Virus record (IMG/VR): IMGVR_UViG_3300044712_000810
Coordinates: 248,001 to 312,000 of that record
Strand: one strand, 5' to 3'
DNA: 64,000 bases
The notes under the pieces were generated by a model. That model worked only from the letters and a program-made list of their open reading frames with translations, had not been told where the DNA came from and ran no database searches. A program made the position numbers and the translations under genes. This document shows, in pieces, positions 32-45,679 of the stretch; position 1 is the stretch's first letter, and every line of letters starts with the position of its first letter.

Positions 32-448
32 ATGGCTGAAATGATTTTTGACCCTGTTCTTGGTAAAGAAGCTGAATGCATTAAGAAAGGCACCAACTCC
101 AAGGGCGATCAAGTTTGGATGAACAAAGAAACCAAAAAGCGTTTTTCCCAAACCCAGTCAGACGATGCAAAGAAGGCCGCAAAGCCTGGTAAGGCAAAGC
201 CCAAAACCCAAACTCGTCCTACTACCGCCGCTGCTACTACTCCTGCAGCAAAGAAAGTTGTAAAGAGTCTTATTTACGTCAACAACCAATGTGTCAAAAC
301 CATCGACGGCAAAGAAGTTAGTAAAGAACAAGCATTTGAACTTATCAAAGAAAACTTCCGCGAAGTCGCACTTCAGAATGCTGAAGTTACAATGAAGAAT
401 GGTGAAACCAAGATTTATTTCACCATCATGACCGGAAACAAAGGTTAA
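32..448 (+). CDS. Prokaryotic ubiquitin-like protein (Prok_Ub / PRTRC protein C-like) with N-terminal extension
   Basis: The C-terminal ~60 aa ends YFTIMTGNKG, resembling the PRTRC-C ending (YTF...GTKG). A K/A/T/P-rich linker precedes it, and E2, JAB and E1 genes follow. Confidence 0.7.
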   Translation: MAEMIFDPVLGKEAECIKKGTNSKGDQVWMNKETKKRFSQTQSDDAKKAAKPGKAKPKTQTRPTTAAATTPAAKKVVKSLIYVNNQCVKTIDGKEVSKEQAFELIKENFREVALQNAEVTMKNGETKIYFTIMTGNKG

Positions 449-455
449 TCTAATA

Positions 456-482
456 GGGGGAGGGATTCCCTCCCCCACTTTT
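456..482 (+). terminator. Intrinsic terminator-like hairpin after the Ubl gene
   Basis: GGGGGAGGG-att-CCCTCCCCC followed by ACTTTT. Confidence 0.7.
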
Positions 483-493
483 GGAAGGATAAA

Positions 494-1102
494 ATGATAA
501 GATCATACAAAAAAACGTTAACAATTACAGCGGATGAAATTCCAATTGAATGTTATCCTTCATTACAATTTAAATTAGATTCACCACGTGATGGTCATTC
601 AGTTAAAATATATAATGAAACTTGGAGTTATTTAATGTCGATGAAAGTTGCAAAAGAATTTATAGAAAAATATAAAGATTCTATCAAATATGTCAACTTA
701 CAACGACTTATTATTTTTATTAAAAATGAAATTGTTGGTGTACAAACTCAAATTCGACTGTCACCTTATGATTTTAAATATCCTAAAAAAACCATAACAA
801 CAAGTTATGGTAGAGAATATGTTACAGATGATTATTCAAAAAATCCTCATAGAACTCGTGTTTTACCAATAAATGAAGAAATTGAAATATTATGGGATTA
901 CTACCGCGTAACAAATAAAGTTGCAGAGTATGAAGAAATCGATTTTACCTTCAAAAATATATATTACTTCATTAAGTTTTTGAAAAAATATAAACAAGAA
1001 TTATTTGAAGCTATTATAATGGATAAAACACATTATCGTACTCTAGTTATTATGAAAACTCAAGAGGAACAAAATGCCAATAGAATTCTTACCAATATGT
1101 GA
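494..1102 (+). CDS. Hypothetical protein within the Ubl cassette
   Basis: 202-aa ORF with SD GGAAGGA; no motif recognised. Confidence 0.6.
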   Translation: MIRSYKKTLTITADEIPIECYPSLQFKLDSPRDGHSVKIYNETWSYLMSMKVAKEFIEKYKDSIKYVNLQRLIIFIKNEIVGVQTQIRLSPYDFKYPKKTITTSYGREYVTDDYSKNPHRTRVLPINEEIEILWDYYRVTNKVAEYEEIDFTFKNIYYFIKFLKKYKQELFEAIIMDKTHYRTLVIMKTQEEQNANRILTNM

Positions 1103-1427
1103 CGAACCTGTAAAAAATGATCATGATCATAGTTTTTATGGTCCATTAAAAAATCATGCTACTTGTAAAAATATACGAATAAATGATTATGAATTCCTTA
1201 CAAGAAATTCAGAAAATGTTAATATCACTCCTGAAAATGCATTAAAAAAACTTAATACCCATATTGAAAAAATGGAAACTAAGTTTTTGATGTTTTCACA
1301 GTTTGATATTAGTACAGATTATTGGTATCATTCTAGGCACTCTAAACAAAGAATTTATCTTGATCCACGGGACGGTGCATTTTGGAAAGAAAAACTAAAT
1401 TTGAAGTCAACTTTACTCAGTTTATAA
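1074..1427 (+). CDS. Hypothetical protein (possibly the N-terminal part of the next ORF)
   Basis: 117-aa ORF overlapping the E2-like ORF by 46 nt. Confidence 0.5.
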   Translation: MPIEFLPICDEPVKNDHDHSFYGPLKNHATCKNIRINDYEFLTRNSENVNITPENALKKLNTHIEKMETKFLMFSQFDISTDYWYHSRHSKQRIYLDPRDGAFWKEKLNLKSTLLSL

Positions 1428-2335
1428 ACAACGATAACAGTGAATATGAAACTATTTTATATTTTCCAAAAGATAATCCCAACACGATTATCATGGAACG
1501 TCCGGGAAGTAATACTTTTCGAAAAATAGATTCTCATCGTGCTGCGAATTTTATGAGACTTACAGAAATCAAAACCGATTGGATAAATATTCCAGGAAGT
1601 TTAGACTCTGTTTCTAAGTTTAAAATTCAAGGTGATATAATTAAATCGATTGTTCCTATCTTTGAAGATGATTATAAAGTATATAATACTACAATCAATT
1701 TTAGTTATATGTTAGAAACAAGTTCTAGAAATGATGTATATGATCCATTTCCATTGGCAGGATTTCATGATAAGAATTTCTCAATGACATGTTTTAAAGA
1801 TCCAAATGAAATGCGTAAAAATAGAATTAAGATTTCATGCAAACTTCCAGTATTCAAACCTTATGTTCGTTGCTCAAGTCAAAAGAGATCACCAATTATA
1901 ACAGTCGAAGACATGTTAATGAAAATTGGTGATAAATTCTATGGTTTCCCATACGGAAACGTTCATGCAAATGGACATATCTGTTATGGAGATGGAAAAC
2001 AAAGATTTAAAAATATGGACGATTTTAGATTGCATTTCTTTTCAACTCAATTCAATGGTCACTATCCATTTCAAATGAATTGTCACAGATATCATTTTAT
2101 GAAGTATGCAAACGCCGAAGATCTAAGAAGTAAAACTATAAGATATAGAACCACAGATTTTAATGATTATAAATTAGATATGGATTTAATCGAATCTGCT
2201 TTAGATTCAAAATACTTCGATATGTTTTCACTTAATTTGCCTCAAGCACTTTATTACTTGTCAAAAGTTGACCCTGAAAATGTAAACACTAAACTGTTTA
2301 TAGAACGTGATATATCACACTTAGAGAAGGTATAA
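1382..2335 (+). CDS. Prokaryotic E2-like protein (Prok-E2 family D / PRTRC protein B-like)
   Basis: FYGFPYGNVHANGHICYG resembles the P(F/Y)xNV...G.IC(W/Y)G motif; FFSTQFN follows; located next to JAB and E1. True start uncertain. Confidence 0.7.
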   Translation: MERKTKFEVNFTQFINNDNSEYETILYFPKDNPNTIIMERPGSNTFRKIDSHRAANFMRLTEIKTDWINIPGSLDSVSKFKIQGDIIKSIVPIFEDDYKVYNTTINFSYMLETSSRNDVYDPFPLAGFHDKNFSMTCFKDPNEMRKNRIKISCKLPVFKPYVRCSSQKRSPIITVEDMLMKIGDKFYGFPYGNVHANGHICYGDGKQRFKNMDDFRLHFFSTQFNGHYPFQMNCHRYHFMKYANAEDLRSKTIRYRTTDFNDYKLDMDLIESALDSKYFDMFSLNLPQALYYLSKVDPENVNTKLFIERDISHLEKV

Positions 2336-2337
2336 AT

Positions 2338-3240
2338 ATGAACATTAACGACCTCGAAGTATTAAAGAATATCAACAATGGAAGTATAACTAAAGTCATT
2401 TTCTATAATTCTGAAGATGATTTGTCACGCGAAAATCTTGATTCATTCAATATTATATTCGCAGGAAATGGTGTTTATTCGTGTATTAAAAATACTTTCG
2501 GTTGCATATTTGATAAAATTCAAGGATTTAAATATACCAATATGAATCTTCTTGAATTCGAATATGAAACCGTTGTTTATCCAAATGTACCTAAACTGCC
2601 GCTTGGAATGTTTGATGAAATAGTTCAAGCGTTTAAGTATGTAAGTAATAAAACTAAGGATGAATTGATGTTCAATGTCTATTGGGATATTGAAAATGAA
2701 GGATTCATTCTTGATTTGGTGAAACAGGATATTTCACCTGGTCATATTAAATATGAATATTCTCGTGAATTTGAATTGGACGAAAATTATATTCGTTATC
2801 TTCAGATTCATTCTCATAATACAATGACTGCAAATTTCTCCACAACAGATAACAATGATGAAACTGGAAGAATTGCATGTTATTTTGGAGTACTTGGATC
2901 ATTTAAAGATTCAACCACATGTTTAAATGTGGATAATAAATTCAGAGTTTATACTGGATCACGTTTCGTTGAAATGGATATTGCATCTATTATCGAAATG
3001 CCAAATACCGGATATGAACTTGATGAAGATTTAATTAAACAACTCGATGAAGTTATTGAAACGAGTGCAATGGCTAGAGTTGTTAAAACAACTACAAGTC
3101 CATTTTATACCGGAATGCGTACAGCAACTCCGACAGCTAATATTACAAGTGCAAAAACTGAACTTACAGATCATGAAGAAGAATTTATGAAATATCTTGA
3201 TGCTTCTGGTCCATTCACTTGGAGTGGAGCTAGTGTGTAA
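2338..3240 (+). CDS. Prokaryotic JAB metallopeptidase (PRTRC protein A-like)
   Basis: IHSHNTMTANFSTTDNNDE = HSHxxMxAxFSxTDxxDE JAB motif; upstream ELMFNVYWD. Confidence 0.8.
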   Translation: MNINDLEVLKNINNGSITKVIFYNSEDDLSRENLDSFNIIFAGNGVYSCIKNTFGCIFDKIQGFKYTNMNLLEFEYETVVYPNVPKLPLGMFDEIVQAFKYVSNKTKDELMFNVYWDIENEGFILDLVKQDISPGHIKYEYSREFELDENYIRYLQIHSHNTMTANFSTTDNNDETGRIACYFGVLGSFKDSTTCLNVDNKFRVYTGSRFVEMDIASIIEMPNTGYELDEDLIKQLDEVIETSAMARVVKTTTSPFYTGMRTATPTANITSAKTELTDHEEEFMKYLDASGPFTWSGASV

Positions 3241-4004
3241 TGATATTCGATCAAATTCGTAATTTACACGTATTTCAAATTGGAGTTGGCGGAACTGGCT
3301 CATGGTTAGTTGCGCCAATTGCAAAATTTCTAAATAATCTATCTCAACGTTTTGGTGTAAATACTGAAATGTCATATACAATCGTTGATGATGATACTGT
3401 CGAGGATAGAAATATCTTAAGACAGAATTTTACTCATGACGATATAGGAAGATCTAAATCCGTAGTTCATGTTAGAAAAAACTTTATGGTTTTTAAAAAT
3501 CTATTTCATGTTCCCAACAGACTTAAAACACCTGCACAAGTAAAAAACTTGTTTTATGGAGAGCTTGAAATAGATAAAGACGTAGTAGTACGTCGACAAT
3601 ATGAAAACTCATTAACAATCATATTTGGTTGTGTTGATAATAATGATGCGAGACAATTAATGTATTCATTCTTAAAAAATAGAATGGACACACCTGTTAT
3701 ATATTTTGACTGTGGGAATAACTTACATTCCGGTCAAATTGTAACTAATTGGTTTCGCATACCAGAAGAGTGGAATCTTACTGGTATTAAAAATAAACAA
3801 GTAAACTTTAAAAAAATGTTTCCAAAGAACGCAGAAGATGGTCCAACCCAATCTTGCGCATTCTTCGGTGACCAATCGCAGAGTATTAATATGTTCTCTG
3901 CAACAATGGCGTTTGCTAACTTACAAACGCTTATAATTAATAATCAAATGCCACCAGTGTTGAAAAACTTCAATAGTTCTGGTTATTCTACATTTGAAAT
4001 ATAG
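3240..4004 (+). CDS. ThiF/E1-like adenylating enzyme (PRTRC ThiF-like)
   Basis: IGVGGTGS, DDDTVEDRNILRQNF, GCVDNNDAR, YFDCGN and QSCA motifs. Confidence 0.85.
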   Translation: MIFDQIRNLHVFQIGVGGTGSWLVAPIAKFLNNLSQRFGVNTEMSYTIVDDDTVEDRNILRQNFTHDDIGRSKSVVHVRKNFMVFKNLFHVPNRLKTPAQVKNLFYGELEIDKDVVVRRQYENSLTIIFGCVDNNDARQLMYSFLKNRMDTPVIYFDCGNNLHSGQIVTNWFRIPEEWNLTGIKNKQVNFKKMFPKNAEDGPTQSCAFFGDQSQSINMFSATMAFANLQTLIINNQMPPVLKNFNSSGYSTFEI

Positions 4005-4015
4005 GAGCATTAAAC

Positions 4016-4354
4016 ATGGATACACTATCTGCTTTTGCAATGGGTGCAGCTACTCGTGGAAAAGAAAAAAAAGTATTTGATTGGCATAAAGCCGCGAAAC
4101 TTATAAATGAACATAATGCAATGGATGCTGTTGCTGGTTTATCTTCTGATATGGAATATACAGCAGGCGAAATCTTAAAAGATGGTAAAATTGTAGATCG
4201 TGATGAAACATATACATATTTGGCATCAACATGGGCAACACCTGTGTTGGTACTCGATAATGATGAAATTCCATGTTATGTAATGGAAAGTGAAACTAAT
4301 TGGGATGCTGAAACTTATTGGCCTGAAAGTGCCATAAAAATGCTTGACAGATAA
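4016..4354 (+). CDS. Hypothetical phage protein
   Basis: 112-aa ORF with SD AGGAG, followed by a terminator hairpin. Confidence 0.65.
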   Translation: MDTLSAFAMGAATRGKEKKVFDWHKAAKLINEHNAMDAVAGLSSDMEYTAGEILKDGKIVDRDETYTYLASTWATPVLVLDNDEIPCYVMESETNWDAETYWPESAIKMLDR

Positions 4355-4358
4355 CAAA

Positions 4359-4390
4359 TGGGGCCGAAAGGCCCCAATTTTAATATTTTT
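4359..4390 (+). terminator. Intrinsic terminator closing the Ubl operon
   Basis: TGGGGCC-GAAA-GGCCCCA followed by a T-rich tract. Confidence 0.75.
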
Positions 4391-4728: not shown

Positions 4729-4950
4729 ATGAAATACTATTTTTACACCGGATCAATCCAATCAAAATGCACAACTGATATTTACATTCGTAGTAATGTA
4801 TTATCAACAGAATTGGATTATTTTCCGTTTAACGTTGCATATGATGAATACAGAACTCAAGATGTAAGATTTACTATTATGGATTGGAAATTAATAAGTG
4901 AAGAAGAATTTAAAGCATATATAAATCGTCATAACCCGGTTGAATACTAA
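4729..4950 (+). CDS. Hypothetical protein
   Basis: 73-aa ORF, closely packed with neighbours. Confidence 0.5.
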   Translation: MKYYFYTGSIQSKCTTDIYIRSNVLSTELDYFPFNVAYDEYRTQDVRFTIMDWKLISEEEFKAYINRHNPVEY

Positions 4951-4951
4951 T

Positions 4952-5419
4952 ATGTCTGAAAAACAAGAAACACACACTGAACAATTAATTATTACATATG
5001 AAGATTTTAGTAAATATATGGATGAAGCGGTGAAACACTTTAAAGAGAAACCATTTGCTAATTATCATCCAATAACACATATTTATGGACCTCCTAGAGG
5101 AGCATGGCCAATCGTAGCACATCTTGCAAACCATTTAAATTTAAAAGTTATAACTGACTTACATGCATTTATACGCCAAGTCGATCACGATTGTGAAAAT
5201 TATCAACATGGTATACTTATCGTTGATGATGTTGCAGATTCTGGTAGAACTTTAGCGGATATTACTCGATTTATGATTGATTATGAATTTTATAACTATA
5301 CTATTTATACTATTTGTAAAAAACCACAAACAGTAGTATGGCCAAGTTATTATAATAAAGAAGTAAGTAATTACACATGGATTTACTTTCCATGGGAGGA
5401 ATTACCAAATGATAGTTAG
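4952..5419 (+). CDS. Type I phosphoribosyltransferase (xanthine/guanine PRT-like)
   Basis: IYGPPRGA, PRPP-binding loop ILIVDDVADSGRTL, and WIYFPWE. Confidence 0.85.
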   Translation: MSEKQETHTEQLIITYEDFSKYMDEAVKHFKEKPFANYHPITHIYGPPRGAWPIVAHLANHLNLKVITDLHAFIRQVDHDCENYQHGILIVDDVADSGRTLADITRFMIDYEFYNYTIYTICKKPQTVVWPSYYNKEVSNYTWIYFPWEELPNDS

Positions 5420-5599: not shown

Positions 5600-7561
5600 A
5601 TGATCTCCTCAGTTAACCTTAGCGCAATACCATTTCAATCAAACACTGACAGTACCCGACTTCAAATGGCAGCCAAGCAATTGGCACAGAGTTTATCACA
5701 TAGGAATTGTGAAGTTCCTTATGTAATTGGTAAAGATTATAATTGTCTTTCTGATAACAGTCCAATCGGTTTATTATTTGCCGAAGATTCGGGCACTGTT
5801 TATTATAATAGAGATGATGTACTCATTTATCATTATGAAACTTTAAATAAATTGGAAGTAAAGTCGATTCCACCAATTAAAAAGACTCATGGAATTTATG
5901 CTAGTAGCTTAAGATCTTCACTTCCAGTAAATATGAAGTTTAATAAAGGTGATATTCTTTATGAATATGACTGTTTTAAAAATGGTATTCCAAGTATTGG
6001 CTATAATGCATTCTCTGCAATGATGCCTTGTTTTGGATTTAACCATGAAGATAGTATTTTAATTTCTGAAAGTTTTGCAGAAAAAACTAGAGCAAATTTT
6101 GTTGATAAAGTTTATGTTCCGATTTATGAATATACTTTATTGCAACAACTATATGATCCTTCAACAAACCATTTTGGATTCTTTCCAAACATTGGTGAAG
6201 AAATCAAAAATAGTTTAATTTGTTGCACACTAACACCTAAAATTACTGATAACATGAAATATGGCGCACATGCCAATATGAAAAACAAAATGATGCTATT
6301 ACTTAAATCTATGAACTTATCTGATTTACTTAGTATTCAAAACTCTTTACCAAACATGAACGTTGAAAAGATCAAAAGTAAACTTGAACATGGTAAAGTA
6401 TCTGGTATTAAAATTCATAAACTTATGGATAACGTAAAGTTATTGGATAAGCGTTTACAAACTGTTCTTGATGGTTTATATAAACTATACACAAACGTTT
6501 TTATTGATGCATATCATGAACTTGAAACAAAGTTCATGCAAGATGTAGCAAAAGATGTATTACGTCGTCACTATGTTTACAAAGATAAAGATAGTGTTCG
6601 AGGTAAATTAGATCTAAAAAACGTTGCATATGTATTGGAAATTGAAGTTACCGATGAGTGTCAATCACATGTTGGTGATAAATTTGCAAATCGTTATGCA
6701 AACAAAGGTGTAGTATCATTGGTATTTCCAGATGATATTGCACCAATTGCAGTACAATCAAATAAACCGGTTGATATTATATTTAACCCCTTTGGTGTAT
6801 TCTCACGTATGAACCTTGGACAATTAGTTGAAGGTATCGTATCTAAAAACGTAATGCATTGTGATAGTTATATCAAAGAAGGAAATAAAAAAGATCTTAA
6901 AGCTTCTATCTGGTGGTTAAATGAATATATCATTAAAAACCTTAATGATATGGAATATTACAATCGTGTAAATTCAGAAGTGATTGCCAGATTGGATGAA
7001 CCAAAGTTTAAAGAACAATTCATTGAAGACGTTAAACAACATAACCTTTTCATTGAAGCGCCAACATTTGGTGAAATTAATGTTCGTAATATTCTTAAAA
7101 ATGGTGTAAATCCAAACGAACAAGTATATATTAAGAAAGAATTTCTTCAATATATGAAAGACAAACTGAAATGTAATATTAATATGCCAATTCAGGATGT
7201 CGTATTGCCAAATATTTATTGTGCGCCGATGTATATTGAAAAATTATATAAATTGGCTAACAAACTTATTACGGCCCGAGATCTTGGTCCAATTAAAAGT
7301 ATTACTGGACAACCAAAACGTGGACGCGCAAATGAAGGTGGATCACGTCTTGGACAGATGGAACTTGAAGGTATTCTTGCACATGGATGTGAAAGAACAC
7401 TTAAAGAGTTCTTGACAGTTAAATCAGATCAACTTGATGCAAAACGTGACTTGATTATGCAGTTAATGAAAACTGGTAATTATCGTATGCGCGATGAATA
7501 TGGTGCATCTGGTAGAACAAAGAAAGTTGTTGACACACTTTTACACTTCCTGCGAGAATAA
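5600..7561 (+). CDS. Phage multi-subunit RNA polymerase, beta-like C-terminal half
   Basis: IPFQSNTDSTRLQMAAKQLAQ, GFNHEDSILISE, VGDKFANRYANKGVVS, NPFGVFSRMNLGQ and GGSRLGQME align with conserved beta regions. Confidence 0.9.
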   Translation: MISSVNLSAIPFQSNTDSTRLQMAAKQLAQSLSHRNCEVPYVIGKDYNCLSDNSPIGLLFAEDSGTVYYNRDDVLIYHYETLNKLEVKSIPPIKKTHGIYASSLRSSLPVNMKFNKGDILYEYDCFKNGIPSIGYNAFSAMMPCFGFNHEDSILISESFAEKTRANFVDKVYVPIYEYTLLQQLYDPSTNHFGFFPNIGEEIKNSLICCTLTPKITDNMKYGAHANMKNKMMLLLKSMNLSDLLSIQNSLPNMNVEKIKSKLEHGKVSGIKIHKLMDNVKLLDKRLQTVLDGLYKLYTNVFIDAYHELETKFMQDVAKDVLRRHYVYKDKDSVRGKLDLKNVAYVLEIEVTDECQSHVGDKFANRYANKGVVSLVFPDDIAPIAVQSNKPVDIIFNPFGVFSRMNLGQLVEGIVSKNVMHCDSYIKEGNKKDLKASIWWLNEYIIKNLNDMEYYNRVNSEVIARLDEPKFKEQFIEDVKQHNLFIEAPTFGEINVRNILKNGVNPNEQVYIKKEFLQYMKDKLKCNINMPIQDVVLPNIYCAPMYIEKLYKLANKLITARDLGPIKSITGQPKRGRANEGGSRLGQMELEGILAHGCERTLKEFLTVKSDQLDAKRDLIMQLMKTGNYRMRDEYGASGRTKKVVDTLLHFLRE

Positions 7562-14907: not shown

Positions 14908-15528
14908 ATGGCCGAAGTGTTGAACCTGACCAAAGGCGAAAACATCTCTCTCGACAAAACCGCTGACCAGCTGACCAACATCTTCGTCGGTCTGGGCTGG
15001 AACCCGCAGAAGGGTGCCGGCGCTGATTTCGACCTGGACGCCACGGTCTTGTGTCTCACCAAGGAAGGCAAGGCCCGCAACGCGGCTGACATGTGCTACT
15101 TCGGCAAACTGAGCCTGTACGACGGCGTCATCAAGCACTCCCCCGACGATCTCACCGGAGGCTCGTCCGACGACGGCGACGACGAGATCATCACCTTCGA
15201 TCTGACCAAGATGCCGGCCGATGTGGCCGAAGCCATCGTTGCGGTCACCATCTACCAGGCCAAACAGCGCGGCCAGACCTTCGGACAGGTCGACAATGCC
15301 TACATTCGCGTTGGCACCGCCGACGTGAAGGGCAACTTCGAGCTGGAAAACGTGAAGGTCCTCGCCAAGTTCGACCTCACCGAGAACGCCTCCGGCGCCT
15401 CCGCCGTCATCATGGCCAAGCTGTACAAGACGGACGAGGGCGAGTGGAAGTTCAAGGTCATCGAGGAAGTCTTGAAGGACTTCGAGATCTCGCACCTGGC
15501 CGATCGCTACGGCGTCATGCACAAGTAA
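14908..15528 (+). CDS. terD: TerD-family stress protein
   Basis: NLTKGENISL, VGLGW, DFDLDA, HSPDDLTGG...GDDE, FGQVDNAYIRV, GEWKF; GC-rich codon usage. Confidence 0.92.
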   Translation: MAEVLNLTKGENISLDKTADQLTNIFVGLGWNPQKGAGADFDLDATVLCLTKEGKARNAADMCYFGKLSLYDGVIKHSPDDLTGGSSDDGDDEIITFDLTKMPADVAEAIVAVTIYQAKQRGQTFGQVDNAYIRVGTADVKGNFELENVKVLAKFDLTENASGASAVIMAKLYKTDEGEWKFKVIEEVLKDFEISHLADRYGVMHK

Positions 15529-15579
15529 CACCTGTGGGGTCGGCTCGAAAGAGTCGGCCCCTTTCTACTGGAGACACAA

Positions 15580-16515
15580 ATGCAACACTACTCGTTCGCG
15601 AACATTTTGATCTTTGGATTGTGCGTAGTTTTAGCACTTTTCATTGATCTCCACACTCACAAAAAGGACGAACCAATCAGCGTTAAAAGCGCTGCACTCT
15701 GGTCTGTCTTCTGGGTAGGTCTGGCGCTCCTGTTTTCCGTCTATATTGGCGCAACACACGGAGCCGATCAATCATCGCTATTCCTCGCCGGATATCTACT
15801 CGAGAAATCTCTCTCAGTGGACAATCTGTTCGTGTTCATGGCGGTGTTTGCATCATTCGGAATTCAAGACAAATATCAGCACCGAATTCTATACTTCGGT
15901 ATTATCGGTGCTCTCATCTTGCGATTTATCTTCATTGCCATCGGCAGCAGTTTCTTGCTCATTGCCGGAAAATGGGCATTAACAGCTTTTGCCTTATTCG
16001 TTTTGTGGTCCGCATGGAAAATGTGGAAATCCACGGATGATGACAATGAAGAAATAGTCGATTACACGGATCATTGGTCTGTAAAAATCGCAAAAAAGTT
16101 CCTTCCGGTATATCCTCACCGAGACGGCCATAACTTCTTTCACAAAGGAGCTTGTACGCCGTTCTTCCTGTGTCTGATAGTAATCGAAGTCGCAGACGTA
16201 ATGTTTGCATTCGACTCTGTTCCTGCCGTCATAGCAGTAACACAGGAACCATTCTTGGTATATACATCCAACATCTTCGCCATTCTCGGCTTGAGGTCAA
16301 TGTACTTCTTGCTGTCAGCGGCTAAAAGATATCTCTGTCACCTTGAAAAAGCAGTTATCATCGTGCTGGTCTTCATCGGCGTCAAGATGCTTCTTGATGT
16401 CTTTGGGCTTGTCCACATTACTCCGGTGGCAAGCTTGATCATCGTGGCAGCTGTACTCATCGGCGGCGTCATTTCGTCATTCTGTTACCCTGAAAAAGAA
16501 GAAATCACACAATAA
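15580..16515 (+). CDS. terC: TerC/Alx-family membrane protein
   Basis: GYLLEKSLSVDNLFVF, QHRILYFGIIGALILR, ADVMFAFDSVPAVIAVT, TSNIFAILGLRSMYF. Confidence 0.95.
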   Translation: MQHYSFANILIFGLCVVLALFIDLHTHKKDEPISVKSAALWSVFWVGLALLFSVYIGATHGADQSSLFLAGYLLEKSLSVDNLFVFMAVFASFGIQDKYQHRILYFGIIGALILRFIFIAIGSSFLLIAGKWALTAFALFVLWSAWKMWKSTDDDNEEIVDYTDHWSVKIAKKFLPVYPHRDGHNFFHKGACTPFFLCLIVIEVADVMFAFDSVPAVIAVTQEPFLVYTSNIFAILGLRSMYFLLSAAKRYLCHLEKAVIIVLVFIGVKMLLDVFGLVHITPVASLIIVAAVLIGGVISSFCYPEKEEITQ

Positions 16516-16526
16516 GGAGCTACATC

Positions 16527-16979
16527 ATGGGATTCTGGGACGATATCAAAGGTGCTGTTTCCAGCGGCTTTAAGTCGCTTTCGGATGAAGTGTCAAAATA
16601 CAAAAACCAGCCCTTCCTGGATGCTGTCCTTGCTGCTGCCGCAATGGTCGCAGCAGCAGATGGTAAGGTCGATTCTTCCGAAAAGAAGAAGCTCATGTCG
16701 TTCGTCACAAACAACGAACTTCTTTCGGTCTTCGAACCCGCCGTGGTCATCGAGACTTTCAAAAAATATCTCGACATCGTCGAACGCGATCCGGACTTCG
16801 GTCCAACTGAATGCATGGCAGTCGTCAAGAAGCTGAAGGGCAAACCCGAAGCTGACATTGCCATCAGCGTATGCTGCGCCATCGGCAAAGCTGATGGCGA
16901 CTTCGATAAGGACGAAAAAGAAATCGTCAAACAAATGTGCGTTGCTCTCGGCATCGATCCGGCGCAGTTCAGTCTGTAA
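16527..16979 (+). CDS. terB: TerB-family protein
   Basis: AMVAAADGKVDSSEK and IGKADGDFDKDEK...MCVALGIDP. Confidence 0.9.
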   Translation: MGFWDDIKGAVSSGFKSLSDEVSKYKNQPFLDAVLAAAAMVAAADGKVDSSEKKKLMSFVTNNELLSVFEPAVVIETFKKYLDIVERDPDFGPTECMAVVKKLKGKPEADIAISVCCAIGKADGDFDKDEKEIVKQMCVALGIDPAQFSL

Positions 16980-24278: not shown

Positions 24279-25289
24279 ATGGCTAAAAAGCCAACAAAAA
24301 AAGAACAAGAAGTTATTAACGATATAAAAGAACATTTGGAACAAACAAAAGAACAAGTAGTTAAAGAGATATTAGATCCTTTAGGAAATAAAGAAACCGA
24401 ATTACTTAATAAAAAATATGCCATTGCGCATATTGCACAAGTATGTCTAACTATACAAGGCGAAGGACCAAAACTTGGAACTCCTTGTATATTAGTTAGA
24501 TTTGCTGGATGTAATCTACAATGTCCATTCTGTGATACAAAGTGGGCAAATAAAGAACTTCCAGATATGCTAACATTTAAAAATATATTAGAAACTGAAT
24601 TTCCAATTAAGTTATCAACTAGTGATAATTCGATTGAAAAGTTTGCTAAATATTTAAAAGACACATATTTTGATCATTATCCGATTAAACATATTATGTT
24701 CACTGGTGGTGAACCTTTTATTTCAGATAATTTAAGAATACTTACTGAAATCATGTCATTTTTAAATAATAAATTTCATACGGGAATTAAATCTATTGAA
24801 ATTGAAACCAACGGAACGCTCGTAACCGCAAGTGATATTTATAATCGATTTGTAAGTGCTAATTATGATGTACAATTAAATATTAGTCCTAAGTTAGATC
24901 TTACGGCACATAATAAACAGTATAGTTCGTTCCAGTCACTTGTGGACAAGTTTAAAATTGTACATTTATATGTTTCAGATAGAAATAATGTATTAACAAA
25001 TTTTAATTATAATTATAAATTTATTTATGATAAGGCGGGCGAAGATCTATTACGTTATTTTATAACGCAAGTAGGAATTCCAAGTGATAAGATTTGTATC
25101 ATGCCACTTACTCCGCATTTGTCAAATATGCCAAAAGATGAATTTTATAAAAAATTCAAGAAGTCATGCGAAGATACTATTTTATTCTGTGTAAAGAATA
25201 ACTACAAATTTACTGACCGTGCTCATGTCTGGATTTATGACATGAAAGAAACCAAAAACGAACTAGACGACGTCTTAAGGAGACAGTAA
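24279..25289 (+). CDS. queE: 7-carboxy-7-deazaguanine synthase, radical SAM
   Basis: TIQGEG...G.PCILVRFAGCNLQCPFCDT (CxxxCxxC), FTGGEP, IEIETNG, ISPK. Confidence 0.85.
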   Translation: MAKKPTKKEQEVINDIKEHLEQTKEQVVKEILDPLGNKETELLNKKYAIAHIAQVCLTIQGEGPKLGTPCILVRFAGCNLQCPFCDTKWANKELPDMLTFKNILETEFPIKLSTSDNSIEKFAKYLKDTYFDHYPIKHIMFTGGEPFISDNLRILTEIMSFLNNKFHTGIKSIEIETNGTLVTASDIYNRFVSANYDVQLNISPKLDLTAHNKQYSSFQSLVDKFKIVHLYVSDRNNVLTNFNYNYKFIYDKAGEDLLRYFITQVGIPSDKICIMPLTPHLSNMPKDEFYKKFKKSCEDTILFCVKNNYKFTDRAHVWIYDMKETKNELDDVLRRQ

Positions 25290-26512: not shown

Positions 26513-26683
26513 TCCAATCAACGACTAAATCCGTAGTATCGTCTAGGCGAGTAAACCTCGGTTTTGTTCGATTGGAAACTCCTAGGAGGGGAGGAGTAGT
26601 TCCTCTCCCGGCCAACTTCGTGTTGACAGCCGGTGATGATAAGCTCCTCCCACTTCTATGCCTTTAACTTACTGGAGACACTG

Positions 26684-27589
26684 ATGAAGAAATGCTTTTT
26701 TCACTCATCGGACATGGATGGATTCGCATCAGCTGCGATCGTCCAACTGAAATATCCTGATGTTAAACTCATCGGGATTAACCATGGTCAGCCTTTCAGG
26801 CACGACATGATACGCAAAACCGATGAAATCTATATGGTCGACTTCTGTCTTGAGCCTGCAGATGAAATGCGAAAACTCGCAAATAACTGTAAAACTCTTT
26901 ACTGGATCGATCATCATGTGTCTCAGATTGATAAGATGGTTGAGGCTAAAATCAAGCTTCCTGGTCTTCTCAGTTACGACGACGATGAAAAAGAAGCACC
27001 TGAAGGCACTATCGCTGGCAGTTTTGCCGCGTGTGAGCTTGTCTGGCAATATCTGTTTCCTGACAAAGAAATGCCTTATGGTATATATTTGTTGGGAAGA
27101 TATGACGTTTGGGATCTCGATGTAGATCCAAATGTCTTGAAATTTCAATACGGTTCTCGTTTACAATCTGTCTTTGTTGATAAAGATAGCGATTTCTGGA
27201 AGCGTTTATTCGCTTCTGATAAAGAATTCATGGATCACATCATCGCAGAAGGTGATGTAATCTTGAGATATGAACGGCAAATTAATGCCAGACTCATGCG
27301 TGGGTATTCATATCTTAAAGATTTCCATGGATATCGTGCTCTTGTCATCAACAGACAATACTCGTCAACACTGACGTTTGAGTCTGTATGGGACGGAGAT
27401 AAACATGATATCATGGTTGCTTACTCAAGAAACCCTGACTGTTGGCTCGTCAGCCTCTACACCGCAAAAAAAGATATTGACGTATCTGCGATTGCGAGGT
27501 CATACGAACACAACGGTAAACGTGGCGGTGGTCATAAGAAAGCGGCGGGATTCCAAACTCAAGATATCTCGCCCTTGTTACCTGCCTGA
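26684..27589 (+). CDS. DHH/DHHA1 phosphoesterase (NrnA-like)
   Basis: HSSDMDG, MVDF, WIDHH, GRYDVW, GGGHKKAAGF. Confidence 0.88.
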   Translation: MKKCFFHSSDMDGFASAAIVQLKYPDVKLIGINHGQPFRHDMIRKTDEIYMVDFCLEPADEMRKLANNCKTLYWIDHHVSQIDKMVEAKIKLPGLLSYDDDEKEAPEGTIAGSFAACELVWQYLFPDKEMPYGIYLLGRYDVWDLDVDPNVLKFQYGSRLQSVFVDKDSDFWKRLFASDKEFMDHIIAEGDVILRYERQINARLMRGYSYLKDFHGYRALVINRQYSSTLTFESVWDGDKHDIMVAYSRNPDCWLVSLYTAKKDIDVSAIARSYEHNGKRGGGHKKAAGFQTQDISPLLPA

Positions 27590-38249: not shown

Positions 38250-38765
38250 ATGGCACTAGAGATCGAACGCAAATTCATGGTGAAGCGAGTTCCAACAGAA
38301 CTCAAATGCATCAAAGAGGTGCATATTTGGCAAGGCTATCTTGCCAATGCTCCCGGAAAGACCGTTCGAGTTCGAGTCATCGACTCTACTCCCGGTCCTC
38401 GTATTGGCATGTTGACCATCAAGATCAATGTGTCAGATTTGTGCAGTAAACACAACTGCCGCGAGGAACTCGAATACGAGATTCCTTTGGAAGACGCATA
38501 TCTACTCCTCAAGAACTGCGGAGGCATCGCAATCGAAAAGATCAGAAAGGTCTATGTTTGCGAACATGGTTATCATTGGGAAATTGACAATTTCCTGGAT
38601 GAAAACAACAGAGGTCTCACAATGGCCGAAGTCGAAATGAAGTCTGAACAGGATTACATCCCGGACAACAAACTTCCTGAATGGCTTGGCTATGAAGTGA
38701 CCAATGATCCCAGATATCTCAATGAGAATTTGGCAAATCGCGGATTTAACACTTGGGGAATTTAA
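38250..38765 (+). CDS. CYTH-domain protein (triphosphate tunnel metalloenzyme)
   Basis: EIERKF, VRVR, IEKIR, WEID, AEVE, EVTNDPRY. Confidence 0.9.
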   Translation: MALEIERKFMVKRVPTELKCIKEVHIWQGYLANAPGKTVRVRVIDSTPGPRIGMLTIKINVSDLCSKHNCREELEYEIPLEDAYLLLKNCGGIAIEKIRKVYVCEHGYHWEIDNFLDENNRGLTMAEVEMKSEQDYIPDNKLPEWLGYEVTNDPRYLNENLANRGFNTWGI

Positions 38766-38771
38766 CAAAGT

Positions 38772-38849
38772 GGTCTGGTAGTTCAGTTGGTCTAGAACGC
38801 TACACTGTCACTGTAGAGGTCGAGGGTTCGAATCCCTTCCAGATCGCCA
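38772..38849 (+). tRNA. tRNA-Asp(GTC)
   Basis: CT GTC AC; G73. Confidence 0.9.
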
Positions 38850-38871
38850 TTAACTTTTACACGAGGTAAAC

Positions 38872-39462
38872 ATGTTCGACCCGGCAACTGCACTTTTTGC
38901 ATCAATCATGGCTCTTACAGGTTGGGGTTTCGTAACCGCAATCGGCACTTTCGTCATCGGATGTCTCGTCATGATCTTCATGCTCGAGGAGTCGATGTAC
39001 GGTAAAGGTTCCATCACGATCATCGTGTGGTACGCAATCATCGACTGGCTTCTCCAGTGGAAGATGTCACTCTTCATCTGGAACAATCCGATGAAGTTTG
39101 GCATTTACGTCGTTGCATTCTGCTGTATCGGCCTTGTCTGGTCGGTCATCAAGCTTATGTTCTACATGAGCAAAAGACGTTCGAAGTTCCAGGAATATAA
39201 AGATTCCTGGATGAAAGCGAATAAACCAAACATGTCAGACATTGATGCTGCATGGTTGGAACACTACAAAACAAATTATGTTCAAGGCATGATTCCTTCT
39301 TTCCCGAAGGCAAAGATCATGGCGTGGATGGCCTATTGGCCGTTCTCCATTTTGGAGTCATTCCTTAGTGACGTTGTGCGTAGTCTGTTCAACGCATTGT
39401 ACGATACATTCGGAAAAATCCACAGAAACATTTACGCGTACTATCGCAAGCAATTCAATTAA
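38872..39462 (+). CDS. Membrane protein
   Basis: Several TM helices at the N-terminus; AWMAYWPFS. Confidence 0.6.
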   Translation: MFDPATALFASIMALTGWGFVTAIGTFVIGCLVMIFMLEESMYGKGSITIIVWYAIIDWLLQWKMSLFIWNNPMKFGIYVVAFCCIGLVWSVIKLMFYMSKRRSKFQEYKDSWMKANKPNMSDIDAAWLEHYKTNYVQGMIPSFPKAKIMAWMAYWPFSILESFLSDVVRSLFNALYDTFGKIHRNIYAYYRKQFN

Positions 39463-39468
39463 CAACGT

Positions 39469-39544
39469 GGGAAGTTAGCTCAGTTGGTAGAGCGCAGTGC
39501 TGATAACGCTGAGGTCAGTGGTTCGATCCCACTACTTCCTACCA
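39469..39544 (+). tRNA. tRNA-Ile(GAT)
   Basis: CT GAT AA. Confidence 0.9.
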
Positions 39545-39568
39545 TTTTTACTAATACACGGAGAAAGC

Positions 39569-40084
39569 ATGAAACGCATCTTACCGTTGCTGTTACTTGC
39601 AGTGTTTCTCGCATCTTGCGGAGATAATAAACCTCCCAACCCTGTTCAGATTGAACAAACATCATCTGATAACGTCGTCACAAAAAAGATTGTGGTGAAC
39701 AAAAACTCACCACTATTCTACGACGTGAAACTCAGTGATGGAACAACTCGTCGGTTCGCAGCGACTTTCAAAGATGTCGAAAGACTCTCTGATGGTCGGT
39801 CAGTTCCGATTGATGTTGCATGGCAGGTTGAAGTGGCGGAAAAAGAGATCCTCAAAAACCAACTTGAGGAAAATCAACCATCAGAAGAACCTGCATACAA
39901 ATACAAGTCTCGTAATGTTGAACTGTACTATCAAGAAAAACTTGTAGCACAGTATACAACACATGCACCATTCTCAACGGATGGTTGGACGTATGTTGGT
40001 ATTGTTGGAAAAAACAATATCAATCATCACATTTACATCAACGGTGCATACCGAATGGTATTAACTTCTGATGAAAACGAATAA
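39569..40084 (+). CDS. Lipoprotein
   Basis: MKRILPLLLLAVFLASC lipobox. Confidence 0.65.
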   Translation: MKRILPLLLLAVFLASCGDNKPPNPVQIEQTSSDNVVTKKIVVNKNSPLFYDVKLSDGTTRRFAATFKDVERLSDGRSVPIDVAWQVEVAEKEILKNQLEENQPSEEPAYKYKSRNVELYYQEKLVAQYTTHAPFSTDGWTYVGIVGKNNINHHIYINGAYRMVLTSDENE

Positions 40085-42746: not shown

Positions 42747-42821
42747 CTCTGTATAGCTCAGTGGCAGAGCTGGGAACTCTAAATTCCCCGGTCGCGAGTT
42801 CGAGTCTCGCTACAGAGGCCA
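42747..42821 (+). tRNA. Amber suppressor tRNA (anticodon CTA)
   Basis: CTCTGTA/TACAGAG, G73, CCA; GGGAA-CT CTA AA-TTCCC; canonical D-loop GG and TTCG. Confidence 0.88.
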
Positions 42822-45097: not shown

Positions 45098-45098
45098 A

Positions 45099-45626: not shown

Positions 45627-45634
45627 CCCAATGA

Positions 45635-45662
45635 GGAGGGGTACTATACCCCTCCTTTTTAA
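45635..45662 (+). terminator. Intrinsic terminator
   Basis: GGAGGGGTA-CTA-TACCCCTCC-TTTTT. Confidence 0.75.
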
Positions 45663-45679
45663 CTACAACCGGAGATACC

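What the first reader, a model, noticed from the sequence alone, without database searches (positions are those of the whole stretch)
32..4004. Complete phage-encoded ubiquitin-like conjugation cassette (Ubl, E2, JAB, E1)
Seen: a Ubl-like domain ending TGNKG, an E2-like ORF (PYGNV...GHICYG), a JAB peptidase (HSHxxMxAxFSxTD) and a ThiF/E1, in one operon closed by a terminator at 4359. Established: this gene set matches the PRTRC/prokaryotic Ub-E1-E2-JAB systems of plasmids and ICEs, and bacterial Ubl systems (e.g. Bil) conjugate Ubl to phage proteins as defence. Inference: here the phage owns the machinery and may tag host or phage proteins, or use the JAB to reverse host Ubl defence. The Ubl has an unusual ~75-aa N-terminal extension and its own terminator, suggesting it is made in excess. 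No E3 is recognisable; 494..1102 and 1074..1427 are candidates.
Basis: partly seen in the sequence, partly recalled or inferred. Interest (0 to 1): 0.8.

Follow-up and report, generated by a model that had tools for sequence, protein, structure and literature searches.

The report
Jumbo-phage ubiquitin-like tagging cassette
A 315-kb phage carries a compact operon for a ubiquitin-like tag plus the enzymes that would activate, transfer and remove it, a very divergent relative of the uncharacterised bacterial "PRTRC" system, and its tag is unusually fused to a remnant zinc-ribbon and a lysine-rich tail.

Summary
Window 32-4376 is one tightly packed plus-strand operon. It encodes a Ubl ending ...TGNKG-stop, two fast-evolving unknown proteins, an E2-like protein, a JAMM/JAB peptidase, a minimal ThiF-type E1 and one more unknown ORF, closed by a terminator at 4359-4376.

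It is a very divergent PRTRC-type cassette (Iyer et al. 2006, operon type 6d). The gene order matches the canonical PRTRC of Ralstonia phage Dina. The host replicon is a 314.8-kb IMG/VR contig from a rhizosphere sample, with split RNA polymerase genes and 27 tRNAs.

The cassette is not unique. JAB and E1 homologues sit side by side in 37 other viral contigs and in cultured phages (Arash, D69, KLEB27-3, Dina; separated by about 2.6 kb in ME3). Many of these loci carry mono-, di- or tri-Ubl genes.

- The "N-terminal extension" is a Cys-less derivative of an InsA-type zinc ribbon plus a Lys-rich linker. About 30 protein clusters share this architecture.
- Every one of 8 such loci has an unrelated strong hairpin directly after the Ubl gene.
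- The Ubl gene is a codon-usage outlier within its own operon.

Conjugation chemistry, targets and biological role remain inferred. No E3 was found.

The parts
32..163 (+). N-terminal module of the Ubl protein (residues 1-44). It is a Cys-less derivative of an InsA-type zinc ribbon. The four ligand positions are D7, L10, N31 and T34; the KKG motif is kept.
   Evidence: 40 of 44 residues are identical to P0003/L046 despite about 20 synonymous differences. It aligns to CPxC...CxxC relatives. Nine of nine of those relatives tested match Pfam PF03811 Zn_ribbon_InsA, best E 7.6e-7. AF2 gave it low confidence.
164..262 (+). Lys/Pro/Thr/Ala-rich linker (residues 45-77). Its length and sequence vary among relatives.
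   Evidence: The model is disordered in this stretch.
263..448 (+). PRTRC_C-like ubiquitin-like domain (residues 78-138), ending G135-N-K137-G138 directly before TAA.
   Evidence: phmmer E 3.9e-10 to a phage di-Ubl. An iterated profile finds it in 27 loci. KG is invariant at the C-terminus. hhalign against Dina PRTRC_C gives probability 86%, E 4.8e-6. The AF2 model has two strands, two helices, two strands with pLDDT about 90.
455..482 (+). GC-rich hairpin GGGGGAGGG-AUU-CCCUCCCCC followed by ACUUUUG. It is a terminator- or attenuator-like element between the Ubl gene and the enzyme genes.
   Evidence: -22.3 kcal/mol. All 7 other ZnR-Ubl loci have a strong hairpin of unrelated sequence in the same 38-65 nt spacer, most followed by U-rich tracts.
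494..1102 (+). ORF2, 202 aa, unknown function. It is the first of two fast-evolving 'middle' genes and is the positional equivalent of PRTRC F/E.
   Evidence: No family hit. 28% identical to L046 671-1207. A weak shared N-terminal motif appears in 8 loci. No similarity to other phages' middle proteins or to Dina F/E.
1074..1427 (+). ORF3, 117 aa, unknown function. It is the second 'middle' gene and overlaps both of its neighbours.
   Evidence: 20% identical to L046 1197-1520. No family hit.
1382..2335 (+). E2-like protein (PRTRC_B / Prok-E2_D type), 317 aa. The candidate catalytic Cys201 is at 1982-1984, with Asn193 eight residues upstream and the FFSTQFNGH motif downstream.
   Evidence: In the family alignment N193, C201, F224 and N225 are invariant. 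12 of 22 family members hit PRTRC_B, best 4.4e-18. hhalign against Dina PRTRC_B gives probability 94%, E 1.7e-7. TTG start supported by L046.
2338..3240 (+). JAMM/JAB metallopeptidase (PRTRC_A type), 300 aa, with an N-terminal alpha+beta domain. Motif residues are E109, H158-S-H160, S168 and D171 (2809-2850).
   Evidence: PRTRC_A E 1.7e-10. Alignments. Homologues lie next to an E1 gene in essentially every related locus.
3240..4004 (+). Minimal ThiF-type E1 adenylating enzyme, 254 aa. It has G15xGGxG20, R61, D133 and the invariant S205-C206 (3855-3857).
   Evidence: ThiF 9e-13 and PRTRC_ThiF 1.8e-22. Invariant columns. The family profile hits the Uba1 adenylation domain at 3.5e-12. QSCAFFGDQSQSIN is conserved in the subfamily.
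4016..4354 (+). ORF7, 112 aa, unknown function. It is the last gene before the operon terminator.
   Evidence: No hits. Not found after the E1 gene in the other loci.
4359..4376 (+). Intrinsic-terminator-like hairpin that closes the operon.

Best explanation
The region is a phage-borne, highly divergent PRTRC-type ubiquitin-like conjugation operon.

Shown:
- The gene products are homologues of PRTRC C (Ubl), B (E2-like), A (JAB) and the PRTRC ThiF (E1), in the canonical order.
- All expected catalytic motifs are intact.
- The Ubl ends in a free Gly.

Inferred mechanism:
1. The E1 adenylates Gly138 of the Ubl, probably passing it to its conserved Cys206.
2. The Ubl is transferred as a thioester to Cys201 of the E2-like protein, with Asn193 playing the role of the HPN Asn.
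3. It is then attached to lysines of phage or host proteins, or of the Ubl's own Lys-rich linker.
4. The JAB peptidase removes it. In relatives with tandem or C-terminally extended Ubls, the JAB would also cut the precursor after KG.

The tag carries a payload: a strongly conserved zinc-ribbon-derived module and a basic linker. These most likely bind a conserved partner (nucleic acid or a protein).

The hairpin after the Ubl gene probably lets the tag be made in excess of the enzymes. The two fast-evolving middle proteins are the best candidates for specificity factors.
For: - HMM matches of E1, JAB and E2 to the PRTRC models and to Pfam ThiF, Prok-E2_D and Prok-JAB.
- Family-level links: 12 of 22 E2-like relatives match PRTRC_B and 2 of 26 Ubl relatives match PRTRC_C. 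hhalign to the annotated Dina proteins supports both.
- Synteny with Dina's E-C-F-B-A-ThiF order and with Iyer et al. 2006 operon type 6d.
- The Ubl / middle genes / E2 / JAB / E1 order is conserved in dozens of viral loci.
- Invariant catalytic residues.
- The C-terminal KG is invariant, and head-to-tail poly-Ubl genes have every repeat ending GxKG. That implies cleavage after KG and use of the free Gly.
- The Asn-to-Cys spacing of 8 equals that of canonical E2s (plus general knowledge of UbcH5 N77/C85).
- Purifying selection on the N-terminal module.
- A hairpin after the Ubl gene in 8 of 8 loci.
- Products of the homologous Arash cassette were detected by LC-MS/MS (PMC10585845; GenBank flags).
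Against: - No biochemical data exist for any PRTRC system (PMC13366799).
- All HMM scores fall below NCBIfam's curated cut-offs.
- The Ubl gives no direct HMM hit.
- Foldseek found no significant match for the Ubl model. The best small-domain matches were GB1 and protein L, not Ub or ThiS.
- The E2 model was poor (pLDDT 53) and matched nothing. The E2 profile has no solved relative.
- No E3, no target and no expression data: no RNA run was listed.
- The hairpin in the window has only four U's after it.
Confidence: 0.7

Rival explanations
1. Sulfur-carrier system. The Ubl is thiocarboxylated by the E1, as in ThiS, MoaD or TtuB, and donates sulfur for a tRNA or DNA-base modification made by the phage.
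For: The E1 is a minimal ThiF/MoeB-type enzyme. In four related loci the 7-deazaguanine genes QueC and QueD/PTPS lie directly upstream of the Ubl gene. The window has a QueE-like gene and 27 tRNAs.
Against: There is no rhodanese, cysteine desulfurase or PP-loop sulfurtransferase in the cassette. A conserved E2-like protein with an invariant Cys, a JAB peptidase and poly-Ubl precursors are hallmarks of conjugation systems. The C-terminus is KG, not GG. The zinc-ribbon and basic-linker payload has no role in sulfur transfer.
Confidence: 0.08
2. Counter-defence by deconjugation or decoy. The main role is for the JAB to strip host Ubl (Bil or CBASS-type) conjugates from phage proteins, or for the phage Ubl/E1/E2 to compete with the host systems.
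For: Bacterial Bil systems conjugate a Ubl to phage tail proteins (bioRxiv 10.1101/2023.09.04.556158, listed). The fast evolution of ORF2 and ORF3 fits an arms race.
Against: PADLOC models for Bil and CBASS components do not match the Ubl, E2 or JAB. The JAB always travels with its own Ubl, E1 and E2, so a full writer system is kept, not just an eraser. The cassette also occurs on plasmids, ICEs and temperate phages.
Confidence: 0.1
3. Plasmid-like partition or maintenance module. This is the meaning usually attached to the name 'ParB-related, ThiF-related cassette'.
For: Literature on ICEs, plasmids and Burkholderia prophages calls it a ThiF-partitioning cassette (PMC13366799).
Against: That assignment is by name only; the paper itself says the function has not been studied. 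No ParB homologue is in or next to the cassette. The replicon looks like a lytic-type jumbo phage replication and transcription module.
Confidence: 0.04
4. Decaying remnant. The cassette is inherited but no longer functional in this phage.
For: Extreme divergence; HMM scores far below cut-offs; the zinc ribbon has lost all four Cys residues.
Against: All reading frames are intact. Catalytic residues are invariant across distant relatives. There is clear purifying selection. The Cys-less ribbon is shared by 13 of the 30 aligned family members.
Confidence: 0.03

Closest known systems
PRTRC system (NCBIfam TIGR03735-03742), equal to operon type 6d of Iyer, Burroughs and Aravind 2006 (PMC1779556). 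Example: Ralstonia phage Dina gp02-gp07.
   Same: - Same four core proteins: a Ubl ending in Gly, an E2-like protein with Cys followed by an FxSxF..H/D motif, a JAB with an extra N-terminal domain, and a ThiF-type E1.
- Same order: C, middle gene(s), B, A, ThiF.
- Fast-evolving middle protein(s).
- Carried on invading DNA elements.
   Different: - About 25-30% identity or less, with all scores below the curated cut-offs.
- PRTRC F, E, D and ParB are not detectable.
- The Ubl has an N-terminal zinc-ribbon-like module and a basic linker, and no C-terminal extension. Dina's C protein has the Ubl first and a 60-aa tail after KG.
- A hairpin separates the Ubl gene from the enzyme genes.
- The host replicon is a 315-kb jumbo phage.
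The Arash, D69 and IMG/VR large-phage version of the cassette (loci L001, L003, L011-L038)
   Same: Same gene order and the same families for Ubl, E2-like, JAB and E1. The Ubl ends GxKG-stop.
   Different: - Those Ubls are bare 65-aa proteins or di-/tri-Ubl tandems without a zinc ribbon.
- Their JAB and E1 proteins are larger (about 400 and 350-450 aa).
- Their middle proteins (about 300 aa and about 80 aa) show no similarity to ORF2 or ORF3.
Bil (BilABCD) and type II CBASS Cap2/Cap3 bacterial Ubl-conjugation defence systems
   Same: The same logic of E1 adenylation, E2 thioester, JAB-family deconjugase and a C-terminal Gly.
   Different: There is no sequence match for the Ubl, E2 or JAB. The E1 and E2 are separate small proteins here, not fused. 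The cassette is encoded by the phage, not the host.
IS1 InsA N-terminal zinc ribbon (Pfam PF03811)
   Same: Relatives of the Ubl's N-terminal module match this family. The KKG...Q.W...K..F framework is kept in the window protein.
   Different: All four Cys ligands are replaced in the window protein. There is no helix-turn-helix or transposase part. It is fused to a Ubl.

Membership tests
PRTRC system / Iyer 2006 operon type 6d | ThiF-family E1 of the PRTRC_ThiF type, with a nucleotide-binding GxGGxG motif and a conserved Cys | tested here: inconclusive
   TIGR03736 gave E 1.8e-22 but 79.8 bits against a curated cut-off of 144.75. Pfam ThiF is above its cut-off. G15xGGxG, R61, D133 and S205-C206 are invariant with Dina and four other phage E1s. 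It is a clear relative, but not an equivalog by NCBI's threshold.
PRTRC system / Iyer 2006 operon type 6d | JAB/JAMM peptidase (PRTRC_A) with an N-terminal alpha+beta domain carrying a conserved Arg and Trp | tested here: inconclusive
   TIGR03735 gave E 1.7e-10, 40.8 bits against a cut-off of 101.8. The full E...HxHx7SxxD motif is present and W116 is invariant. The position that is Arg in Dina, Arash and D69 appears to be Lys here; this is my own reading of the alignment.
PRTRC system / Iyer 2006 operon type 6d | E2-like protein (PRTRC_B / Prok-E2_D) with a conserved Cys and a conserved His C-terminal to it | tested here: met
   Direct hits are weak (1.6e-3 and 2.9e-3). However, 12 of 22 family members hit PRTRC_B (best 4.4e-18), and hhalign to Dina B gives probability 94%, E 1.7e-7. 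C201 is invariant. H227 in FNGH aligns with the FTH of Dina.
PRTRC system / Iyer 2006 operon type 6d | Small Ubl (PRTRC_C) with a conserved C-terminal Gly | tested here: met
   There is no direct HMM hit. The family profile against Dina PRTRC_C gives probability 86%, E 4.8e-6, with the ...GNKG and ...GRKG ends aligned. 2 of 26 relatives hit TIGR03738. KG is invariant.
PRTRC system / Iyer 2006 operon type 6d | Accessory proteins PRTRC F, E, D and an associated ParB-family protein | tested here: not met
   No hit for ORF2, ORF3 or ORF7, or for the flanking ORFs. hhalign and phmmer against Dina F and E were negative. Middle proteins of ten related loci were also negative. Only positional equivalence holds.
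PRTRC system / Iyer 2006 operon type 6d | Gene order: Ubl, helical protein, E2-like, JAB, E1 | tested here: met
   Window order compared with Dina and the 2006 description.
Ubiquitin-like beta-grasp modifiers | Beta-grasp fold | tested here: inconclusive
   The AF2 model of residues 78-130 has two strands, two helices and two strands at pLDDT about 90. That is the order of elements of a minimal beta-grasp. Foldseek found nothing at E<=0.001. The top small-domain matches were GB1 and protein L, which I recall being classed with the beta-grasp fold, not Ub or ThiS.
Ubiquitin-like beta-grasp modifiers | Exposed C-terminal Gly, usable for adenylation | tested here: met
   G138 is followed by TAA. 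It is invariant across 26 relatives. Tandem repeats all end in KG.
Canonical E2/UBC enzymes | UBC fold, with a catalytic Cys about 8 residues after the HPN Asn | tested here: inconclusive
   N193 and C201 are invariant and 8 residues apart. The structure model was too poor (pLDDT 53) and matched nothing. The profile has no PDB relative.
Bil / CBASS Cap2-Cap3 defence systems | Sequence membership of the Ubl, E1-E2 and JAB in the PADLOC models | tested here: not met
   Only the E1 gives weak hits to CBASS E1-E2 fusions (best 8.6e-6). There were no hits for the Ubl, E2 or JAB.
InsA-type zinc ribbon (PF03811) | Four Cys zinc ligands (CPxC ... CxxC) | tested here: not met
   The window protein has D7, L10, N31 and T34 at the ligand columns. 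17 of the 30 aligned family members keep the Cys residues, and nine of nine tested match PF03811. The window module is therefore a derivative, not a zinc-binding member.

The most novel reading that the evidence does not exclude
The zinc-ribbon / Lys-rich-linker / Ubl protein may be a nucleic-acid-binding or polymerase-binding modifier. The phage's own E1 and E2 would link it covalently to itself (through the linker lysines) and to proteins on or near phage DNA or the transcription machinery. That would give a covalently cross-linked, reversible protein coat or mark that protects or reprograms the infecting genome. Under this reading, PRTRC-type cassettes in plasmids, ICEs and phages share an 'establishment of incoming DNA' function.
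Probability: 0.12. Interest if true: 0.85.

Novelty: new variant of a known kind. Interest (0 to 1): 0.62.

Why it matters
PRTRC-type Ubl/E1/E2/JAB operons were predicted in 2006 and are common on mobile DNA, but none has been studied biochemically.

This work shows that a divergent form is widespread in large lytic-type phages, including cultured ones: Salmonella phage Arash, Vibrio phage D69, Acinetobacter phage ME3 and Bacillus phage KLEB27-3. The question 'what does a virus of bacteria do with its own ubiquitin-like system?' is therefore directly testable.

The zinc-ribbon-fused Ubl, the poly-Ubl genes and the conserved attenuator-like hairpin give concrete handles:
- a tag with a built-in binding module;
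- an obligatory JAB processing step;
- tag-over-enzyme stoichiometry.

If conjugation is confirmed, it would be a phage-side counterpart to the host Bil and CBASS Ubl defences.

Tried and rejected
- **Nucleotide search:** megablast of the region against GenBank phages gave no match.
- **Direct HMM detection of the Ubl domain:** Pfam and NCBIfam, also run on the C-terminal 63-69 aa alone, gave only noise.
- **E2-like word search:** the word-based search found only the query itself.
- **E2-like structure:** the AF2 model had pLDDT 53, and Foldseek against the PDB gave nothing. The profile against PDB sequences gave nothing. The JAB profile against the PDB gave only noise.
- **ORF2, ORF3 and ORF7:** Pfam, NCBIfam, PHROGs and PADLOC gave nothing. 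ESM Atlas on ORF2 and ORF7 gave scores of 0.56-0.64 and TM<0.5, which is not meaningful. hmmsearch, phmmer and hhalign against other phages' middle proteins and Dina PRTRC F/E were negative.
- **Programmed frameshift idea:** I considered a frameshift joining ORF3 to the E2 frame at the A_AAT_TTG heptamer at 1397-1403. I rejected it because the L046 homologue has its own GGAGG + TTG start at the same place and the N-terminus is conserved. I did not build any joined product.
- **Codon usage as a sign of high expression:** the other GC3-rich genes in the window are auxiliary genes that look acquired (TerBCD, NAMPT and others). The outlier status of the Ubl gene is therefore ambiguous.
- **Expression test:** only one DNA run (rhizosphere metagenome) was listed, and no RNA run.
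- **Further relatives of the ZnR-Ubl:** scans of viral and metagenome contigs found only the source contig, or nothing.
- **Arash 'structural protein' labels:** these are not taken as evidence for virion location. That proteome lists 116 proteins, including ribonucleotide reductases.

Full report
**What is there**

The window comes from IMGVR_UViG_3300044712_000810, a 314,837-bp viral contig. Window position 1 is about contig position 248,001. The only public run listed as holding it is a rhizosphere metagenome.

All long genes lie on the plus strand. The surroundings form a jumbo-phage replication and transcription module:
- An RNA polymerase beta-prime fragment with NADFDGD lies just upstream (L005 546-2510).
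- Beta-like subunits lie at 5600-7561 and 54167-55468, with distant similarity to the split polymerases of the PBS1, phiR1-37 and Staphylococcus jumbo phages.
- DNA ligase, helicase, ribonucleotide reductase and a QueE-like enzyme are present.
- There are 27 tRNA genes.

Between the polymerase genes sits one compact operon:
- 32-448: 138 aa
- 494-1102: 202 aa
- 1074-1427: 117 aa
- 1382-2335: 317 aa
- 2338-3240: 300 aa
- 3240-4004: 254 aa
- 4016-4354: 112 aa
- a clean intrinsic-terminator-like hairpin at 4359-4376

The genes abut or overlap. The one exception is a 45-nt spacer after the first gene.

**Checking the four named components**

*E1.* It is unambiguous. Pfam ThiF gives 9e-13, above the cut-off, and PRTRC_ThiF gives 1.8e-22. 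Aligned with five phage homologues, it keeps the GxGGxG loop, R61, D133 and an invariant Ser-Cys (C206). The family profile finds the active adenylation domain of Uba1 at 3.5e-12.

*JAB.* It matches PRTRC_A at 1.7e-10. It carries the complete JAMM signature E109 ... H158-S-H160-x7-S168-x2-D171, plus the extra N-terminal domain with an invariant Trp.

*E2-like protein.* Alone it gives only weak hits: PRTRC_B 1.6e-3 and Prok-E2_D 2.9e-3. Its relatives settle the matter.
- In an alignment of 22 proteins from the same position in other viral loci, N193, C201, F224 and N225 are invariant.
- 12 of the 22 match PRTRC_B, down to 4.4e-18.
- The profile aligns with the annotated PRTRC B of Ralstonia phage Dina at 94% probability.
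- The Asn lies eight residues before the Cys, the same spacing as the HPN Asn and catalytic Cys of canonical E2s. The canonical spacing is from my own knowledge.

*Ubl.* It gave no direct HMM hit, even as an isolated domain. Homology came through relatives.
- phmmer against ORFs of related loci found phage Ubls at 3.9e-10.
- An iterated profile collected them from 27 loci.
- All of them end in G-x-K-G at, or within one residue of, the stop codon.
- The profile aligns with Dina's PRTRC C at 86% probability, E 4.8e-6, with the ends in register.
- An AlphaFold model built on this alignment gives residues 78-130 as two strands, two helices, two strands at pLDDT about 90. This is the order of elements of a minimal beta-grasp.
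- Foldseek found no significant PDB match. The best small domains were GB1 and protein L rather than ubiquitin or ThiS. I therefore call the fold compatible, not demonstrated.

**What it is**

The order Ubl, middle gene(s), E2-like, JAB, E1 is exactly that of the canonical PRTRC set annotated in Ralstonia phage Dina (E-C-F-B-A-ThiF). It also matches the 'fourth operon type' of Iyer, Burroughs and Aravind 2006: a Ubl with a C-terminal Gly, a rapidly diverging helical protein, an E2-like protein, a JAB with an N-terminal domain, and an E1 (PMC1779556).

Membership is partial. All HMM scores are far below NCBIfam's curated cut-offs. PRTRC F, E, D and ParB are not detectable in the window or in ten related loci. 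PADLOC models of the Bil and CBASS systems match only the E1, weakly.

I therefore file it as a very divergent variant of the PRTRC kind, not as a Bil-like system.

**How common it is in phages**

A scan of IMG/VR with a small JAB alignment returned 37 further loci, many on contigs of 100-316 kb. In nearly all, a JAB gene is followed by an E1 gene. Most show the full order: Ubl, about 300 aa, about 80 aa, an E2-like protein of about 250 aa, JAB, E1.

GenBank phages also carry both genes: Salmonella phage Arash, Vibrio phage D69, Bacillus phage KLEB27-3, Acinetobacter phage ME3, a human-faecal phage scaffold, and the temperate Ralstonia and Burkholderia phages. In ME3 the two genes are about 2.6 kb apart, and the JAB ORF appears cut short.

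Several relatives encode head-to-tail poly-Ubl genes in which every repeat ends in GxKG:
- di-Ubl in L011, L016, L024, L036 and L038;
- tri-Ubl in D69;
- a tetra-Ubl, P0031.

Others have one extra residue or a long tail after KG (L019, L026, L037, Dina). These architectures make sense only if a peptidase, presumably the JAB, cuts after KG to free the Gly. This is the same logic as polyubiquitin precursors.

In Arash the true Ubl lies in a different frame from the annotated gp251c. Products of this Arash cassette were detected by LC-MS/MS. That shows expression but not virion location, because the data set lists 116 proteins, including ribonucleotide reductases (PMC10585845).

[quoted passage not shown] My searches found no paper on such a cassette in jumbo phages.

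**The N-terminal extension**

A full HMMER scan of 1.84 billion representative proteins, using a two-sequence profile, found 32 proteins at E<=0.001. Nearly all are 117-166 aa with the same three-part layout.

- In 17 of the 30 aligned members, the first about 40 residues carry CPxC...CxxC. Nine of nine tested match Pfam Zn_ribbon_InsA, best 7.6e-7, with two above the curated cut-off.
- In 13 members, including the window protein, all four Cys residues are replaced (here D7, L10, N31, T34). The KKG...Q.W...K..F framework stays.
- The closest relative is P0003 on the 2.4-kb contig L046. It shares 40 of 44 residues of this module, despite about 20 synonymous differences. The same pair is about 45% identical in the Ubl domain, 28% in ORF2, 20% in ORF3 and 33% in the E2-like protein.

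The module is therefore the most constrained part of the whole cassette and must contact something conserved.

The linker is Lys/Pro/Thr/Ala-rich and varies in length. Where contigs are long enough, these Ubls head the same operon: one or two middle genes, an E2-like protein of about 270-310 aa, a JAB of about 260-320 aa and a ThiF of about 250 aa. In four loci QueC and QueD lie just upstream.

**The hairpin and 'made in excess'**

The window's spacer holds GGGGGAGGG-AUU-CCCUCCCCC followed by ACUUUU (-22.3 kcal/mol). Taken alone it is unremarkable (z -1.8), and it failed the terminator scan's T-run rule.

However, all seven other zinc-ribbon-Ubl loci have a 38-65-nt spacer at the same place. 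Each contains a strong hairpin of unrelated sequence (-16 to -30 kcal/mol, z -3.5 to -8.9), usually followed by a U-rich tract. The remaining genes of the operon overlap.

A structure that is conserved in position while its sequence is not is good comparative evidence for a functional RNA element. The simplest reading is a leaky terminator, or a 3'-end stabiliser, that raises tag over enzyme.

The Ubl gene is also a codon outlier. Its GC3 is 0.41 against 0.15-0.24 in the rest of the operon, and C is used at 52% of NNY codons against 13-28%. This is ambiguous, because the other GC3-rich genes in the window are auxiliary genes that look acquired (TerD/C/B, NAMPT, AAA ATPase, GDSL, CYTH, DHH). 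No RNA data set was listed, so expression was not tested.

**The unknown genes**

ORF2, ORF3 and ORF7 match nothing in four HMM libraries or the ESM Atlas. ORF2 and ORF3 have positional counterparts in every relative. Only a faint shared N-terminal motif of the first gene survives, and in L055 a single 290-aa gene fills the slot.

This matches the 'rapidly diverging' middle protein of the 2006 description. It makes them the natural candidates for specificity factors, but nothing identifies them as E3s.

I considered a -1 frameshift joining ORF3 to the E2 frame. I rejected it because the L046 homologue has its own GGAGG-TTG start at that point.

**Mechanism and confidence**

Shown:
- homology of the four core proteins;
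- intact catalytic motifs;
- a free C-terminal Gly;
- conserved synteny across many phages;
- poly-Ubl precursors in relatives;
- purifying selection on the N-terminal module;
- a conserved hairpin after the Ubl gene.

Inferred: the chain of adenylation, thioester transfer and isopeptide formation; JAB reversal; a tag-over-enzyme ratio; and a binding role for the ribbon and linker.

Unknown: targets, timing and benefit to the phage.

Rivals, all judged less likely for the reasons given in the rival section:
- sulfur carrier;
- pure counter-defence eraser;
- partition module;
- decaying remnant.

**Verdict**

This is a new variant of a known but functionally unexplored kind. Its distinctive features are the Ubl fused to a zinc-ribbon derivative and the conserved hairpin after the Ubl gene; related phages in addition carry poly-Ubl genes. 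Cultured relatives make it experimentally tractable.

Noticed in passing
window 27644-57720; tRNA with anticodon CTA at 42747-42821: There are 27 tRNA genes, including an amber-suppressor-type tRNA that ARAGORN calls tRNA-Pyl. TAG is still used as a stop (for example the E1 gene at 4002-4004), and TAA dominates (33 TAA, 6 TAG and 5 TGA among long ORFs).
   Followed up: partly
window 14908-16979: A TerD-TerC-TerB (tellurite-resistance-type) gene cluster has GC3 of 0.52-0.86, against about 0.2 for the rest of the genome. It looks like a recent acquisition.
   Followed up: partly
window 26636-27589, 38250-40619, 43676-47359: Further GC3-rich auxiliary genes: a DHH/DHHA1 phosphoesterase, a CYTH protein, a GDSL lipase, a NAMPT-type nicotinamide phosphoribosyltransferase and an AAA ATPase.
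   Followed up: partly
L005 546-2510 (upstream of the window); window 5600-7561, 54167-55468: Split multisubunit RNA polymerase genes (a beta-prime fragment with NADFDGD, and beta-like pieces) flank the cassette. They are distantly related to those of the PBS1/AR9, phiR1-37 and Staphylococcus jumbo phages.
   Followed up: partly
L001 (Salmonella phage Arash OQ632216) about 107-304: The real 66-aa Ubl (...IYFSRRTGTKG-stop) lies in a different reading frame from the annotated gp251c (L001 102-320). The GenBank annotation appears to have picked the wrong frame.
   Followed up: yes
L003 1376-2167 (Vibrio phage D69); L011, L016, L024, L036, L038; protein P0031: Head-to-tail poly-Ubl genes with 2, 3 or 4 repeats, each ending GxKG. 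This is a phage counterpart of polyubiquitin precursors.
   Followed up: partly
proteins P0014, P0016, P0017, P0019, P0023, P0032: Six members of the zinc-ribbon-Ubl family end in ...G-x-K-S instead of ...K-G. A C-terminal Ser on a Ubl is unusual and unexplained.
   Followed up: no
L049 519-2553, L050 448-918, L051 65-508, L055 4660-5849; window 24279-25289: 7-deazaguanine pathway genes (QueC, PTPS/QueD) lie immediately upstream of the zinc-ribbon-Ubl gene in four related loci. The window has a QueE-like radical-SAM gene 20 kb downstream.
   Followed up: no
L002 (Acinetobacter phage ME3) 1742-2455: The annotated 'PRTRC system protein A' ORF ends right after the first His of the JAMM motif (…DIH). 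A tRNA-Met gene lies about 200 nt downstream. The JAB gene may be interrupted or truncated there.
   Followed up: no
window 4940-5419: A phosphoribosyltransferase (xanthine/hypoxanthine PRT-like; Pfam 2.8e-12) follows the cassette, after two small unknown ORFs.
   Followed up: no
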